In this document: one piece after another, positions 2,924 through 9,395 of the stretch | Numbering within the stretch: position 1 is the stretch's first letter | Layout: every line of letters begins with the position of its first letter | Assembly (NCBI GenBank): GCA_038496445.1 | Contig: JALMLS010000488.1 | Span: 62,001 to 126,000 of the forward strand | Length of the DNA stretch: 64,000 nucleotides | Direction: 5' to 3' | From: Trichosphaerium sp. ATCC 40318 | Taxonomy: Eukaryota > Protista > Tubulinea | Position numbers and translations under genes: made by a program | Notes under the pieces: generated by a model | Told to the model about the DNA's origin: nothing | Database searches by the model: none | What the model saw: only the letters and a program-made list of their open reading frames with translations

Positions 2924-4488
2924 TTATTTTTTCCTGCACACAAGGCAACGTTCATTACTGTTAGCCAGACACCACAGCTTTCTGATAACTTCAAAATCTG
3001 TAAACCTTTTTACAAAATCCTGGATCAAACTATCCGTTTTAGCTGTAATAATTGTAGGGTGTCGCTTCGGCCATTTAAGCGTCAGAATAACGTAGCCACC
3101 AGAGTTCATAAATGTATGGAGTGTTGAAAACACGTTGTCCAACATCTCTTTTGGGTCATTGTTTATGTCAACAACCTAGTTGCAAAGTGAGCAAAAAACA
3201 AACAAACAAACCAAAAAGAATTTGCAGCAAGCCCATTGGGGTATCAAAACCACTGATGGTACGTACCATTAAGTCGTATTTATATTCTCCTATCTCATCA
3301 AGGGCGAATTGTGCCCTAAATTTGGAATAAAGATTTGTTTTTGTGATAGAATGGTTTGTTTACCTTTTTTGAATATGTCGAATTTTGTCGTTTGGTGCAA
3401 TCTATAAGCATCCAGTTAACGCTAATATGAAGGGATAACTTTGTACCTTTAGTTTTCCTGGATCTACAGCGACAACAAATGATACCTTCCCACTTAGGTA
3501 CTCAGACCATCCTATAAAGTCGTAAGTGATCATCACTAAAGTTCATGAAAAGAAGTATGAAGCATACCTCCTGGTGAAGCACCAACATCGATGGCTACCC
3601 ACTCTGGCTTTAATTCTAAATGAACTACATTGCAAATAAATATTGAATGGAGCCACAAACAAAACACAAAGAAAGTTGAAACGCACCTCGCTCTATTGTT
3701 TCTTTGAGTTTGTAATAAGCACGTGACAGTCTGTGTTTTTTAACAGAGTGTATTGCGTTTTCAACACAAAAGAAGACTTCTTTAGGAGCTAGTCCCATGT
3801 AGTAGCCGTCATCAACGCATATGATACTCAAGTAGTGACTAAATTCCTTTGGATGCAATTTAACGCCATTCTCTTCGAGTGTATCCAGGATTTGGTCGCT
3901 TCTGCCTTTTGGGAATATTTGTACTCGGAGTGTCAAGTCTGCGATGTCAAAGGACGACACGTCGAGTGTAGGCACTTTTTTGGTGATTGTGTAGTATCTT
4001 AGCTGTTTGTTAGTGGTCTTGTAAGATAAAACACCGCCAGAGTAAAATATGGGATAATACCATGATCTATACGCTAGGCGGTGCTATTGTAGTACCTGTG
4101 TACGTAGCGATAGAGCATATCGTGTTTAAATAGTTCCAAGAGGAACTAATGCCATTATGGGTGACTATGGAGTGTGCCAATGCGTACGGAATGAGGATTA
4201 GGGTGTTCCAGCCACACTAGTGATGGGAGTGTAGCAGCTACGCTTGCTTCAGGGTATACCTCAGGAATGTACCTACATTGGTAAGAAGTGCGCTCGTTTT
4301 GTGCGGAAAATGTACTCTGCGATTCTGCTTGTATGCGTATCATCGCACATTACAACGACATAGCCTAATCCAGGCTTGTTGGAATTAAAGAACGTATTTG
4401 AAGGTGTAGACTCCTTTTTGGTACTCTCAGAGGTACTCGACGCAATGGCGTCATCATCTAGCTTGATCCGCTTTGTCTTAGGTTCCAT
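2924..4488 (-). CDS. FtsJ/RrmJ-fold, RlmM-like RNA 2'-O-methyltransferase
   Basis: SRAYYKLKE, VAIDVGASPGG|WSEYL, VVAVDPG and GGYVILTLKW motifs. Basic N-terminus MEPKTKRIKL. Confidence 0.75.
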
Positions 4489-4665
4489 ACGTTATTAATA
4501 CTCTGAAAATACGAAAAAAGTGAAAATTGACACCAACTTAACATTTACCGGACTTAAACAGGGTGGTGTCACGTGTTTTATTTTAAGTATGTTGCAACAC
4601 GTGTTCTTTTATGTACATTTGCTACATACAATGGCTGTCAACTAATGTGGTGTGCAAACAACGTA

Positions 4666-7657
4666 TTATTGGGCGTCAGCTTCTGCCTGTACGAGGTCGC
4701 CTGACGAAAAAATGAGCTTAAAGTGTTCCAAAACACCCTTCTCGTATCCTAGCTCTGCTAGCGCTCGCTTTACTACACCAAGTATTAGTATTCATACGGT
4801 TAAAAGTCGAATACCTGTTGGCCATTCAGGTGCTTCTTTGGCATTCTTTGGGAGCGCGCGGAGGAAAGAAATTAAGGAATTTCTTAGTTCTATGCGTTTG
4901 TGTGTTAGCCACTCACAAAATATGGGTTGAAGATAAGAAACTACCTATTTGAGATTGATTCAGGAGAGCATCATATTGAGGTTTAAGAAGAAATTCTTTT
5001 GTAGTGGTTGCCAAAGAGCAGACATAGTCGAGGAATATTTCCTAGTTTGTCACGTGTTAGTTATTTATAGAGGTACAAGACTGAAGAGACGTACTATTCT
5101 CCTAGCTGCTTCAGGTATTGAAGCTGACTCGTCTGACATTGGTACTACATGTAAGTCATTACCCCATATCAGTTGTGTTTCATGATTGCTCCTAATTAGT
5201 TCATTCAAAGTTAGTAATAATTCTTCTTTTGTTTGTGTAGTACAAGAGCTGTAAGGCAGTGCCGAACTTGGCATCAAGTTGTTGCCGTTTTTGCTGTATT
5301 ACATCGGGGTTTTCCGTCCACTTTGCCCCTTTGCTAAAAGTTTACAATGTGAGTATTTGTTCAATTGTCTTTATATTGTGTCATACCTCGATGATATAGA
5401 TCGTCTTACTTCATCAGCAATGCGATGAAAGTTATCATCCTTTAACGAGAACCCAGCAAAGAGCATATGTTGCGTAATTAACAGTGATTGTACGATACCC
5501 GACAGTGCTGATCTGCGTGTTGCATAGCGCATGTAATGTTCCTAGTATTGTTAATAAAATCTGAAATCCAATCAATTAAAGCTGATGGACTCACCCTTGT
5601 GAGTACAATATCCTCAGGGTGGCTCGCGCAGCCATGAAGTTTGAGTATCCATCTATCACACTTTGAAGCAGGCGCATACGGTAAAATGGCCGTGTCTAGT
5701 ACTAATTTAGATATTACTTTGTCATCGACAACTTTACCGTATCCAGCGCTTCTGGAAGCTAACTCAAACATTTCATTGTAATTTGTCGTGACTATCTAAA
5801 AAAAATGGATAGGTTAACCCTTAATTTAATTAGGTCGCGATAATCTTACTTGATGTACTGGAAGTCCAGCAAGGAGTGTACATGACAAAGAGTATGAATG
5901 CACTTGTACAAGCTCTGCAACTGTTTTATTGAGTTCTGTTTCACCTCCTAGACGGTTCTCAATAACAGAAGCACTGTCCAGGACATTCATCTAACAAAGG
6001 GTCAGTTCAACACTTGTTAACACAACTATCGTTTCGTTATACATACCTTTTTAATGACAGCTTTTTCTTTGGGCGTCATTTGTGCGCGATCTGCCAGTCG
6101 TTCAAGCAACTCTCCCCACGTAGGCATACCTGCCCCTGCACTAGTACATGAGATTAACGAACAATCAAAGCTGTATAAGTTCCTAAAAGGGACTGTTACC
6201 TAACGCCAGATCCCAAGAACAGGACTAACCGCTCATCTCGTAGAAGATTAGCACTAACTTTATTAGGTGTTTGAAATTTATGCCAGTTGAATCACGTGCA
6301 GTCGTTTGCCTTCACTCAAGAGTTTGTCATCATGATTTAGTACTTTTCTCCAGAGGTTGACCTGTTTAGCAAAACGTTCACGTTCTAATTGAATAGCTGT
6401 GATAGCAGCACGTTTCAAGTTGACAAGTGCTATATCAAACTCAAACCTAGACAAGAAGGGTAAAAACCAACAAAAAAAAAACTTGATATTAAGAAAAACG
6501 GAATAGTACTTTTTAGCAGCCTTGAACAATACAGGAAGAAGTGATACTATAATACCTCCTGTTGACCTACACAGTACAATAAATATCAATATCAAATACA
6601 AACAAGCGACTCACGCGCTGGCACCTCCTTGTCCTGTTCCAACAAGTGGTAATGCAACAAGATGTTTCCATCTTCCGTTTCTTGGTTTTTTGTCTTTCAA
6701 GTCGTCATGAACTTGAGAAAAGAATTCACGTGCTCCATCAATGTACCACTAATTTAGAATCATGACTGTGTTTTAACCTTTTTTTAAAATACATACTTGA
6801 ATATCAGCGATTGGTTTCCTTTCATGTTTCTGCGCAATTCGGTTCGAATGTATAAGTTTATCACAGCTAAAAGAGCCATGTTAAATCGTTCATAAACAGT
6901 CATGTATACTCTTACCGAGAACATAATTGTGCCTTATCTGCTTCACAATATATAGTAGCGCTCATTTCGACATTACAATGGTGACAAGCAGGGAGCTACG
7001 CCGAGGAACTGTCAGTACCTATTCAACAAAAAAAAAGAAAAAAGGATGTACTTTTATCCCACCAACATTTACTAGCCATGGCATACCACGTGACTTTCTA
7101 TACTCATAACCGTTACATTTGAATACTCTCATCGCTATATAAATTTATCAGAAAGACAGCTGAGTTTAAAAGACGAATAGGTTATTGCCTTTGTTGGTCC
7201 AATCCTTTGGTCTTTGAGGAAGCCCAAGTTTTTCTTTTGGAACGCCCCACGTTTTTTCAACGGTCCATTTTTCATCCGTTGGAAGCTGAAAAAAGCGATT
7301 ACGTGAGGTTCTTAGTCATAGCAGTAAAAGTCGTACCATCCATGCGTCACAAGTTAATTTGGAAAGATCGCCATGCACTACAAACACATGGCCGCTTTGT
7401 GGAGTGATTTCATACTGATCCAACGTACGATATGCCTGTTTACGTAGGATATCGCGAACTTTGTTATACGGTTTAGATTTCGTTATTTTATATTACGTAC
7501 GTCCTTCTATGTTCGCATCTAAGGCTTTACGACCTCCTTTGGGCGTAATGCAAGCAGAACTATTGAGGTTTTTTGCCATTGCCGGCACAGACGTCCCATT
7601 GGTCGGGGTAACTATATTTGCCGATAACGGCGTGGTTATATTGCTTTCTTCGGCCAT
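4666..7657 (-). CDS. Macrodomain-like + SIR2_2 (SIR2-like) fusion protein
   Basis: N-terminal GHVFVVHGDLSKLTCDAWMLPTD and LVALPLVGTGQGG (macro-like). C-terminal LVLFLGSGVSAGAGMPTWGELL, IVTTNYNEMFE, LKLHGCASHPEDIVLT and HMLFAGFSLKDDNF (SIR2_2). About a dozen introns. Confidence 0.85.
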
Positions 7658-7818: not shown

Positions 7819-9395
7819 TCAGTACACTGGAAATTCTGGATCAACCTCTTTGGCCCACGCCTCCAATCCTCCACGCACATTGCGTACAGACTTGAAGCCA
7901 TTGGATAAAAGTATTTGGGTTGCGATTTGAGAGTCAACACCTCGCCTGCAAAGTACAAAGATATCTTTATCTTTCTGAAGCTCATTTGCTCTTTCGTTGA
8001 TTTCTTCTAAAGGTACATCTAGAATATTTGAGTTAGCTATTACTTTGGTGTCCAGGATTTACGTTTAGATCCTTTCAAAGAGCATATCTTAAACTGGGTT
8101 TCGTTCCTGACGTCAAGAAGTACATGAGGTTTTCCTTCTTTTTGTATTTTCTGCAACTCTGTAGCTGTAATAGAAAGGGATTCATGCAGTGTATCGTTCA
8201 AGAGAGGCTATAATATGTCATTAAAGAATACCAGAAATACAGTCTCAAGGTGAGTTTTACCTTATCTGATGAAGGTGCTCCACAAAATTGTTCATAGTCG
8301 ATTAGAGTCGTTATTGTAGGGTTGCTACCTTTCACTAAATTAGCACGAAAATCTCGTCAACACGTCATACCACATACGCAACAATTCTTGTTTGTTGGTA
8401 ACGAAATGCGTGTAAAGCTAGCCGACAGTGCGCTGTACAATAATAATTTTTTTGACAAGGTTTCTGTTTGAAATGTCAATGAGGTAAAATGAAGAGCTAC
8501 AAATGACATACCACCAATATCACATATAATCTTGATAACCTCCATAGCTTGCAGGCATCCAATTGTACCGGGTACTATCCTTGTATTAGAACAATATTTT
8601 TTAGGTGTTCGTACCAACACCAACAACACCATTGTCGTTGCAACTTGATACTGTATCTGGTGAAGGTGGTGTAGGGAAAATACATCGCATGCAGGGTCCA
8701 CCTTTGTGATTGTATACTGTCAACTTTGTTGACGTTAGTAAGTACTTTAATAGCTTAATATAGCAAGTACCTGTCCTTCAAAACCAATTGCACTGCCAGA
8801 CACAAGAGGCTTCTTAGAGAGTACACATGCGTCATTTAATAAGTATCTTGTGGGCACATTATCTGTGCAATCAACAACTACATCATACGGTGCTATTATA
8901 GACATGCAGTTTTTCGATGTAAGAAGTGCTTTATGGGTGACTATTGAGATATCCGAATTCAACCCTTCTAGGCGTTCCTTTGCTGACTGTACTTTGCTCA
9001 CGTTTCTAACTTGATTATCACGTGGAGCCTCAAAAATCGTTTCAGCACGTACACTTTGTTTTCGGAATGTATGATTTGCCTGTGAAGGTTATTGAGGTCC
9101 ACTGTATCAGAATCTACAATACACATCTTTCCTTAAACAATATGAGTGCCATACTACGTATTACGCGTATATACCTATGCCAGCACCCGCTAGATACAGT
9201 GCTGCACTCGCACCAATGCCACCAGCCCCAACAAGTACAATACTCGCTCCACGAAGTTTTAATTGGCCTATATACGCATGTTAGCCACAATTGCGGAAAA
9301 CAGAACTGACCTTCAATTCCAAACTCAGCCAGGATTAGCTGGCGACCGTATCTACCAACCTCGCGGTTTGTTAAAGCGTAGGGGGCGCCTTTCAT
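7819..9395 (-). CDS. MOCS3: Adenylyltransferase/sulfurtransferase MOCS3/Uba4 (ThiF + rhodanese)
   Basis: [48 protein letters not shown]. Rhodanese [11 protein letters not shown]...[17 protein letters not shown]-stop. Confidence 0.95.

What the first reader, a model, noticed from the sequence alone, without database searches (positions are those of the whole stretch)
4666..7657. Bacterial-type macrodomain-SIR2 fusion: candidate NAD-based immune effector, now intronised
Seen: a macro-like N-domain (GHVFVVHGDLSKLTCDAWMLPTD, LVALPLVGTGQGG) fused to a SIR2_2 domain with no Zn-finger cysteines seen, with TTNYN (usually TTNYD) and LKLHG. Established: Zn-less SIR2 domains are NADase effectors in Thoeris, DSR and short-pAgo defence, and macrodomains bind ADP-ribose derivatives. 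Inference: this architecture, which I associate with actinobacterial proteins, was transferred to a phagotroph and may work as a single-chain sensor-NADase against giant viruses or bacteria.
Basis: partly seen in the sequence, partly recalled or inferred. Interest (0 to 1): 0.72.

Follow-up and report, generated by a model that had tools for sequence, protein, structure and literature searches.

The report
Known amoeba macro–SIR2 NADase-type gene
This is a real, spliced and transcribed amoeba gene that joins an ADP-ribose-binding macro domain (with a small zinc finger inserted in it) to a bacterial-defence-type SIR2 NAD-cleaving domain, but this fusion, and this very gene, are already listed in a published survey of eukaryotic "SIRim" proteins, so it is a well-documented case, not a discovery.

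Summary
A minus-strand gene (ATG 7657, stop 4668-4666) with 20 exons gives one 671-aa reading frame.

Spliced contigs from three public runs support 16 of 19 introns. A published transcript fragment supports two more and puts both domains on one RNA.

- Bacterial relatives are common, about 520 aa and stand-alone. They come mostly from Myxococcota and Planctomycetota, not Actinobacteria, and have no conserved partner or defence-island signal.
- The eukaryotic copies form one clade (this amoeba, Echinamoeba, Capsaspora) that shares the B-box insert and several intron positions. The acquisition is therefore old, not a recent transfer into this phagotroph.
- Bonhomme et al. (bioRxiv 10.1101/2024.09.18.613514) already describe this SIRim+Macro "clade C" in 83 eukaryotic species. 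Their table lists two Trichosphaerium sp. Am-I-7 fragments that read identical to this gene.

Details that paper does not mention: the B-box module lies between two phase-0 introns, and a clade-specific Asp-to-Asn change gives TTNYN. NADase and immune function remain untested.

The scan flagged another Macro-SIR2 gene elsewhere in this genome (s1-400763).

The parts
4666..7657 (-). Complete coding region of the macro/B-box/SIR2 gene: 20 exons, 19 introns, 671 aa (685 aa if the 42-nt intron is retained)
   Evidence: Local frame check of the spliced model gives one ORF from ATG 7657 to stop 4668-4666. Intron joints come from spliced contigs.
7501..7657 (-). Exon 1 (start codon and polar N-terminal tail, aa 1-52). 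The following intron, 7459-7500, is inferred only.
   Evidence: No RNA contig lies upstream of 7441. The GT..AG 42-nt intron restores the frame into the macro exon.
6371..7393 (-). Macro domain (aa 75-292), interrupted by the B-box insert. It carries GHVF...GDL...CDAW (Asp90) and the LPLVGTGQGG phosphate loop.
   Evidence: The profile of homologous N-domains hits macroH2A macro domain 7ny6 at E 7e-7. AF2 plus Foldseek return only macro domains. tblastn of homologues onto the window.
6797..6995 (-). B-box zinc-finger module (aa 154-203) on two exons (6995-6916 and 6866-6797), bounded by phase-0 introns 6996-7051 and 6749-6796 and split by intron 6867-6915
   Evidence: Cys/His pattern. Alignment with the B-box of Capsaspora, Echinamoeba and P0006 against the gap in bacteria. 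zf-B_box Pfam hits come from homologues only. The exons on their own are too short for Pfam.
5390..6228 (-). SIR2_2 (SIRim) catalytic core, aa 325-516: GSGVSAGAGMPTW NAD loop, TTNYN, LKLHG, FAGFSLKDDNF
   Evidence: Pfam SIR2_2 on exon pieces. PADLOC ThsA on exon pieces. The family profile hits ThsA, DSR2 and KomC.
5775..5783 (-). Codons for N417 (equivalent to ThsA N112), Y418 and N419 (AAT, where 230 of 237 relatives have Asp)
   Evidence: DNA read. Residue mapping. Motif counts. ThsA N112/H152 mutant data in PMC7272460.
5634..5636 (-). Codon for His452 (LKLHG), equivalent to ThsA H152
5696..5737 (-). In-frame 42-nt GT-AG intron inside the SIR2 core. It is spliced in run X3 and retained in a contig of run X1. 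Relatives lack these 14 aa.
   Evidence: Joint table and pieces. Alignment with homologues. Sequence.
4669..5333 (-). C-terminal conserved part (aa 517-671): a low-complexity linker, then the last strands and helices that complete the SIR2 fold (FGTAL, ARRIEIFLDY, LLKPQYDALL motifs)
   Evidence: Conserved across the family. In the AF2 model of the Echinamoeba homologue, Foldseek alignments to SIR2 domains span about 330 columns.
4580..4665 (-). 3' untranslated end of the transcript
   Evidence: Contigs of X1, X2 and X3 end at 4580-4609 (table 8).

Best explanation
Shown:
- The gene is an intact, expressed nuclear gene of an amoeba, almost certainly Trichosphaerium sp. Am-I-7.
- It encodes a member of the published eukaryotic 'SIRim clade C'.
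- Its layout is an N-terminal macro domain with a B-box zinc finger inserted in one loop, followed by a zinc-less ThsA-type SIR2 domain.
- The lineage is bacterial-like in origin but old in eukaryotes.

Inferred mechanism:
- The SIR2 domain consumes NAD+ (as a glycohydrolase or ADP-ribosyl transferase to water), using Asn417 and His452.
- The macro domain does not look like a hydrolase. It lacks the MacroD-type Asn and Gly-rich loop 1, but keeps the adenine-contacting Asp and the GTGxGG phosphate loop. It is taken to bind an ADP-ribose-type ligand and gate activity, probably through oligomerisation as in ThsA, DSR2 or FAM118B.
- The eukaryote-only B-box adds a self-association or partner-binding surface.
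- A role in infection-triggered NAD depletion is plausible by analogy but is not shown.
For: Gene model and expression:
- 16 introns come from spliced contigs in three runs. One contig joins the last macro strand (exon 9) to the first SIR2 exons.
- The ORF is intact.
- The published transcript fragment P014699 reads the same from the GTGQGG loop to the C-terminal region.

SIR2 identity:
- Pfam SIR2_2.
- Profile hits to ThsA E 1e-30, DSR2 E 1e-23 and KomC E 3e-18.
- Foldseek hits of the Echinamoeba homologue model to KomC, ThsA and DSR2.
- PADLOC ThsA E about 1e-35 over the SIR2 part only.
- ThsA N112A and H152A abolish NADase activity (PMC7272460), and both residues are kept here.

Macro identity. 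All family-invariant macro residues are kept in the window.

Clade membership:
- Supplement file 4 of 10.1101/2024.09.18.613514 lists Capsaspora P007514 (= P0004), Echinamoeba P002063/64 (= P0263/P0153) and two Trichosphaerium fragments as clade C.
- In the tree, the window groups with them at SH-aLRT 99.
Against: - No biochemical or infection data exist for any clade C member.
- The bacterial homologues have no conserved neighbour and no TIR/ThsB signal generator. They match no whole-protein model in PADLOC or NCBIfam. No family recurs in more than 4 of 97 flanking genes, and those that recur are ordinary metabolic families.
- The Asp of TTNYD, conserved in 230 of 237 relatives, is Asn here and in the Echinamoeba-like subclade. 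From memory, this residue lines the nicotinamide pocket in sirtuins, so activity or co-substrate may differ.
- Macro loop 1 is not Gly-rich, so ADP-ribose binding itself is unproven.
- Exon 1 and the start codon have no RNA support.
Confidence: 0.6

Rival explanations
1. It is a housekeeping or signalling enzyme of NAD/ADP-ribose metabolism, not an immune effector. For example, it could be a protein (de)modifying sirtuin-like enzyme whose macro domain reads or processes its own ADP-ribose-type product, as in SirTM-macro pairs.
For: - The neighbours of the bacterial homologues are ordinary metabolic genes with no recurrent defence genes.
- Two metagenomic loci place it next to ADP-ribose-processing genes: a NUDIX gene overlapping by 4 nt in L001, and an Inositol_P + ADP-ribosylglycohydrolase gene in L004.
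- The gene sits among housekeeping genes in the window, with a ThiF + rhodanese MOCS3-like gene upstream.
- It is long-lived and intron-rich, with conserved intron positions.
Against: - The NUDIX and ARH associations do not recur in 80 genome loci.
- The SIR2 core is closest to NADase effectors (ThsA, DSR2, KomC), not to deacylases or SirTM.
- The zinc/substrate-binding module of protein-modifying sirtuins is absent.
Confidence: 0.25
2. In this amoebozoan subclade the SIR2 domain is catalytically altered or dead because of the Asp-to-Asn change (TTNYN). The protein would then work as a nucleotide-binding scaffold or sensor, or would use a different dinucleotide.
For: - Asp is present in 230 of 237 family members. 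Asn occurs only in the window, Echinamoeba, P0154, P0265 (TTNFN), P0001, P0003 and P0005.
- The change is fixed across a clade, which suggests a selected shift and not decay.
Against: - The two residues shown to be essential in ThsA (Asn and His) are intact.
- The rest of the NAD-binding motifs are conserved.
- TTNFN-type motifs also occur in other eukaryotic SIRim clades (clade B), so Asn at this site is a recurrent natural state.
Confidence: 0.1
3. One reading: a recent horizontal transfer of an actinobacterial macro-SIR2 gene into this phagotroph.
For: - The family is abundant in bacteria, and the eukaryotic clade nests within bacterial sequences.
- A few Actinomycetota carry it (L014, L020, L084).
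Against: - The gene has 19 spliceosomal introns.
- It is 53-56% identical to Echinamoeba and only about 40% identical to the best bacterial hits.
- It shares the B-box insert and intron positions with Echinamoeba-like and Capsaspora genes.
- The nearest bacterial group is Myxococcota/Planctomycetota.
- Clade C is reported in 83 eukaryotic species.
Confidence: 0.03

Closest known systems
Eukaryotic SIRim clade C (Bonhomme et al., bioRxiv 10.1101/2024.09.18.613514)
   Same: [quoted passage not shown] The window's own protein fragments, its Echinamoeba relative and its Capsaspora relative are all listed as clade C. The paper proposes the same bacterial ThsA-like ancestry and immune role.
   Different: The paper's text does not mention the B-box insert (0 occurrences of 'b-box'), the intron structure or the TTNYN variant. 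The listed Trichosphaerium entries are fragments that lack the N-terminal half, including the B-box.
Type I Thoeris effector ThsA (SIR2-SLOG; PDB 6LHX, 7UXT, 8BTO)
   Same: Its SIR2 domain is the closest solved relative (E 1e-30) and has the same TTNY(D) and HG catalytic motifs. It is a NADase activated by ligand-driven assembly.
   Different: The sensor here is an N-terminal macro domain, not a C-terminal SLOG domain. No ThsB/TIR partner lies next to the bacterial homologues. The motif has Asn in place of Asp.
Type II Thoeris ThsA (2TM-Macro, binds His-ADPR)
   Same: It uses a macro domain as the presumed ligand sensor of an effector.
   Different: Its effector is a membrane-spanning module, not SIR2. 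No transmembrane segment is seen here.
DSR2 and KomC/HAM-SIR2 defence NADases
   Same: They share the zinc-less SIR2 fold (Foldseek TM up to 0.8 on the target). DSR2 is a single-protein system.
   Different: They have other sensor domains or partners, and neither has a macro domain or a B-box.
Vertebrate FAM118B/FAM118A (SIRanc)
   Same: They are eukaryotic SIR2_2 proteins related to antiphage sirtuins. They form filaments and process NAD (PMC12700824).
   Different: They belong to a different SIRim clade, with a much weaker profile match (E 2e-6) and no macro domain.
macroH2A-type macro domains (e.g. Capsaspora macroH2A, 7NY6)
   Same: This is the best sequence match of the N-domain (E 7e-7). 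It shares the GDLT...CDA..PT and G-x-G loop motifs and is a non-catalytic binder type.
   Different: The domain here is not attached to a histone, loop 1 is not Gly-rich, and a B-box is inserted.

Membership tests
SIRim clade C (SIRim + Macro) | SIR2_2/SIRim domain without the sirtuin Cys4 zinc module | tested here: met
   Pfam SIR2_2 on two exons. Only three isolated Cys lie in aa 325-516.
SIRim clade C (SIRim + Macro) | Macro domain fused in the same polypeptide | tested here: met
   Macro fold shown by profile and by structure. One ORF and one transcript.
SIRim clade C (SIRim + Macro) | Groups phylogenetically with listed clade C members | tested here: met
   The window falls in an SH-aLRT 99 clade with Echinamoeba P0263 and Capsaspora P0004, both listed as clade C. 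Only quick trees were obtained, and other clade C taxa were not in the tree.
SIRim clade C (SIRim + Macro) | The protein itself is in the published list | tested here: met
   By eye, EP00028 Trichosphaerium P011002 and P014699 read the same as model residues about 370-671 and about 240-640, apart from a short duplicated/intron-derived stretch in P011002.
Type I Thoeris ThsA | SIR2 NADase core with the catalytic Asn and His | tested here: met
   N417 and H452 align to ThsA N112 and H152.
Type I Thoeris ThsA | C-terminal SLOG (STALD) ligand-binding domain | tested here: not met
   PADLOC ThsA models match only profile positions about 10-215 of 478. The C-terminus completes the SIR2 fold.
Type I Thoeris ThsA | Adjacent ThsB (TIR) gene | tested here: not met
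   No family recurs in more than 4 of the 97 flanking genes of 57 bacterial loci. No TIR or ThsB appears among the families listed, but only the top 25 families are shown.
Type I Thoeris ThsA | Ligand-activated NAD+ hydrolysis | not testable with these tools
   This needs biochemistry.
Type II Thoeris ThsA | N-terminal transmembrane helices plus a Macro domain | tested here: not met
   The macro domain is present, but the 73-aa N-tail is polar and the AF2 model of the homologue shows no membrane helices. No dedicated TM predictor was run.
Canonical sirtuin deacylases | Cys4 zinc-binding module in the small subdomain | tested here: not met
   No CxxC pairs occur in the SIR2 region. The canonical sirtuin SIRT7 is only a marginal hit (E 0.009).
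MacroD-type ADP-ribosyl hydrolases | Catalytic Asn after strand 2 and Gly-rich loop 1 | tested here: not met
   The family has PTD and a Trp-containing segment where macroH2A has PTN...GQVGG (alignment).
B-box zinc finger (PF00643) | Seven or eight Cys/His/Asp zinc ligands with B-box spacing | tested here: inconclusive
   The pattern C157, C160, C170, C178, C181, H186, H194 is present and aligns with homologues that pass Pfam. The two exons searched alone (26 and 23 aa) gave no Pfam hit.

The most novel reading that the evidence does not exclude
After an old bacterial-to-eukaryote transfer, a B-box zinc-finger module was inserted, apparently by exon shuffling, into a surface loop of the macro domain. 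In this gene the module is still framed by two phase-0 introns. In the amoebozoan subclade the nicotinamide-pocket Asp then became Asn. Together these changes would have turned a ThsA-like NADase into a eukaryote-specific, B-box-assembled immune or stress effector with altered co-substrate or reaction chemistry. This would be a mechanism not yet described for any SIRim protein.
Probability: 0.15. Interest if true: 0.6.

Novelty: already known. Interest (0 to 1): 0.28.

Why it matters
Bacterial antiphage domains that survive in eukaryotes, such as SIR2/SIRim, TIR, cGAS/STING and viperin, are a current route to finding new innate-immunity genes. This gene is a clean, full-length, expression-supported example of the SIRim+Macro lineage in a culturable amoeba. 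It could serve as a model for testing whether clade C proteins are ligand-gated NADases.

Its value is as documentation and as a source of sharper hypotheses (the B-box insert and the Asp-to-Asn variant). It is not a new kind of system, because both the fusion and its proposed immune role are already published.

Tried and rejected
- Pfam and PADLOC on the macro exons found nothing. The macro call needed a family profile and a structure model.
- The window's own protein is not in the large protein collections. The best match is 53-55% identical, so no protein id exists for it.
- The joined spliced model was therefore never sent to any search, folding or database tool. Those searches were done exon by exon by reference, or with natural homologues (P0114, P0263).
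- The joined model was built only inside local scripts. There it served to check the frame, map residues, compare with proteins already fetched, and place the gene in the tree.
- Conserved operon partners or a defence-island context for the bacterial homologues: none found.
- The NUDIX and ARH neighbours seen in two metagenomic loci do not recur.
- Viral origin or giant-virus homologues: only one distant SIR2-only hit in IMG/VR.
- The 'careful' IQ-TREE run did not finish within 452 s. Only quick trees with SH-aLRT support are reported.
- A literature search for the D101N sirtuin work was unproductive, so the role of the Asp is stated from memory only.
- Pfam on the two B-box exons alone gave no hit because they are too short.
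Full report
**Observation.** Pfam places SIR2_2 on two separate exon pieces: 5481-5795, E 1.1e-9, and 5374-5541, E 4.4e-9. PADLOC gives weak ThsA hits on the same pieces. The composition (about 40% G+C) and the many short ORFs fit an intron-rich eukaryotic gene.

**Gene model.**
- Contigs from three public runs (X1, X2, X3) lie on the stretch with gaps bounded by CT..AC or CT..GC on the plus strand. These are GT-AG and two GC-AG introns on the minus strand.
- A loose end at 6916 joins to 6866 and defines one more intron.
- In total, 16 introns of 42-59 nt are RNA-supported. Three were inferred from sequence, frame and homology: 7459-7500, 6567-6614 and 6447-6509.
- Two of the three inferred introns were later confirmed by a published transcript fragment. 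Only exon 1 and its intron remain without RNA support.
- One X1 contig joins exon 9 (last macro strand and helix) to exons 10-11 (the SIR2 GSGVSAGAG loop). The published fragment P014699 runs from the macro GTGQGG loop into the C-terminal region. The two domains are therefore on one mRNA.
- The joined model was assembled only inside local scripts, for frame checking, residue mapping, comparison with proteins already fetched, and the tree. It was never sent to a search, folding or database tool. Those steps used exon references or natural homologues, and the joined search was left out.

**Domains.**
- An exhaustive HMMER search with the TTNYN/LKLHG exon found 214 representatives. Many are 500-570 aa with the motif near residue 300.
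- tblastn of these proteins onto the window shows collinearity from GHVF to the C-terminus. The whole architecture is a conserved family (alignment A1).
- Pfam sees only SIR2_2 in these proteins, plus zf-B_box in two.
- A profile of 48 N-domains hits the Capsaspora macroH2A macro domain (7ny6, E 7e-7 over 160 residues).
- An AF2 model of one bacterial N-domain (pLDDT 90, pTM 0.87) returns only macro domains among its best 50 PDB matches. The macro call is therefore sound.
- The alignment shows that the adenine-contacting Asp (CDAW) and the GTGxGG loop are kept. The MacroD-type catalytic Asn and Gly-rich loop 1 are not. This favours a binder over a hydrolase.
- The full-length family profile hits ThsA (E 1e-30), DSR2 (E 1e-23), KomC (E 3e-18) and FAM118B (E 2e-6).
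- A full-length AF2 model of the Echinamoeba homologue (pLDDT 86, pTM 0.86) matches KomC, ThsA and DSR2 SIR2 domains over about 330 columns. The conserved C-terminal part therefore completes the SIR2 fold.
- N417 and H452 correspond to ThsA N112 and H152, whose mutation abolishes NADase activity (PMC7272460).

- Residues 154-203 form a B-box-type zinc finger (C-x2-C-x9-C-x7-C-x2-C-x4-H-x7-H). It is inserted between the VNVGG strand and the WY helix of the macro domain. It is absent from all bacterial relatives and present in Capsaspora, Echinamoeba, P0006, P0154 and P0265.
- In the window the module occupies two exons and lies between two phase-0 introns. The upstream intron (GGIK|LP) is at the same place in the Capsaspora gene (L091) and in an Echinamoeba-like metagenomic contig (L087). 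This looks like an exon-shuffling insertion.
- The window and L087 also share intron positions at DAWM|LPTD, near WSNxG, after the SIR2 'RS.G.' turn, and at ARR.E|IF. The intron after 'RS.G.' is in-frame in both genes, 42 nt in the window and 54 nt in L087.
- Capsaspora shares the position in the GGAxx|xxGG loop and has one intron a single codon away, at KK|MN versus M|N.

**Asp-to-Asn.**
- The Asp of TTNYD is present in 230 of 237 family members.
- Asn occurs only in the window, Echinamoeba, P0154, P0265 (TTNFN), P0001, P0003 and P0005.
- The codon is AAT in the DNA. A contig of X2 covers it without a listed difference.
- TTNFN-type motifs also occur in clade B SIRims.
- From memory only, this Asp lines the nicotinamide pocket of sirtuins. 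A literature search did not retrieve the source.

**Distribution and origin.**
- A scan of one genome per prokaryotic species found 160 relatives. The best 80 are mainly Myxococcota, Planctomycetota (Gemmataceae), Bradymonadia, Eremiobacterota/Vulcanimicrobiota and Chloroflexota, with few Actinomycetota.
- Among the flanking genes of 57 loci, no family recurs in more than 4 of 97. No TIR/ThsB or defence enrichment is visible.
- The NUDIX and ADP-ribosylglycohydrolase neighbours seen in two metagenomic loci do not recur.
- PADLOC and NCBIfam have no whole-protein model for the family.
- Viral contigs hold one distant SIR2-only hit.
- In two quick maximum-likelihood trees, the B-box-bearing eukaryotic sequences form one clade (SH-aLRT 99). 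With P0013 added, support is 92-94. This clade sits inside a Myxococcota/Planctomycetota-rich bacterial group (SH-aLRT 96). The careful search did not finish.
- The window protein is 53-56% identical to Echinamoeba and about 40% identical to the best bacterial proteins.

**Prior knowledge.**
- Bonhomme et al. [quoted passage not shown] They report them in 83 species, branching with ThsA-like bacterial proteins, and propose an immune role.
- Their supplementary table lists Capsaspora P007514, Echinamoeba P002063/64 and two Trichosphaerium sp. Am-I-7 fragments as clade C.
- Read by eye, the Trichosphaerium fragments are the same as residues about 240-640 and about 370-671 of the local model, apart from a short duplicated/intron-derived stretch in P011002. 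This identifies the source organism and shows that this very gene is already catalogued.
- The FAM118 paper also notes Macro-bearing SIR2_2 proteins in its tree (PMC12700824).

**Verdict.** The macro call is verified, and a B-box is added to the architecture. The bacterial-origin and sensor-NADase idea is reasonable but already published and still untested. The 'actinobacterial', 'recent transfer to a phagotroph' and 'defence island' parts are not supported. Interest is low to moderate, and the novelty rating is 'already known'. Two small leads are undescribed in the papers I could search: the intron-framed B-box insertion and the clade-specific Asp-to-Asn change.

Noticed in passing
window 5696-5737 (-); L087 about 2333-2386: A short in-frame intron sits at the same spot of the SIR2 core in two amoebae (42 nt here, 54 nt in the Echinamoeba-like contig). 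It is retained in one RNA contig (X1). It is read through by the prokaryotic gene caller that produced P0001. The EukProt fragment P011002 shows a duplicated or partly retained version of it.
   Followed up: partly
window 8040-9126 (-): The upstream neighbour on the same strand is a MOCS3/Uba4-like gene. Its exon pieces hit ThiF (E 5e-25) and Rhodanese (E 1e-3).
   Followed up: partly
window 3400-4512 (-): The next gene downstream starts about 70-100 nt after the end of the macro-SIR2 transcript (separate contigs of X1 and X2 end at 4497-4512). Pfam finds nothing on two of its ORF pieces.
   Followed up: partly
window 6254-6299 and 7135-7188 (-): Two of the 19 introns use GC-AG instead of GT-AG. 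Both are supported by spliced contigs.
   Followed up: no
window 5006, 5452, 5500, 5673, 7100, 7223: Single-base differences separate the contigs of runs X1/X2 from those of X3. They look like strain or allele variation, and none touches the catalytic motifs.
   Followed up: no
L001 9423-11602; L004 10001-16322: In two metagenomic bacterial contigs the macro-SIR2 gene sits beside ADP-ribose-processing genes. In L001 a NUDIX gene overlaps it by 4 nt. In L004 it is followed by an Inositol_P + ADP_ribosyl_GH fusion, a hypothetical gene and a DUF6508-TPR gene. The association does not recur in 80 genome loci.
   Followed up: yes
L091 3001-6790 (Capsaspora owczarzaki CAOG_00925): The Capsaspora orthologue carries a roughly 400-aa low-complexity N-terminal extension before the macro domain. 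It has at least five introns.
   Followed up: partly
P0013 (714 aa, Logan contig): This more distant eukaryote-like member lacks the B-box. Its model contains an F/S-rich stretch after the GAGLPSW loop that looks like an unspliced intron.
   Followed up: no
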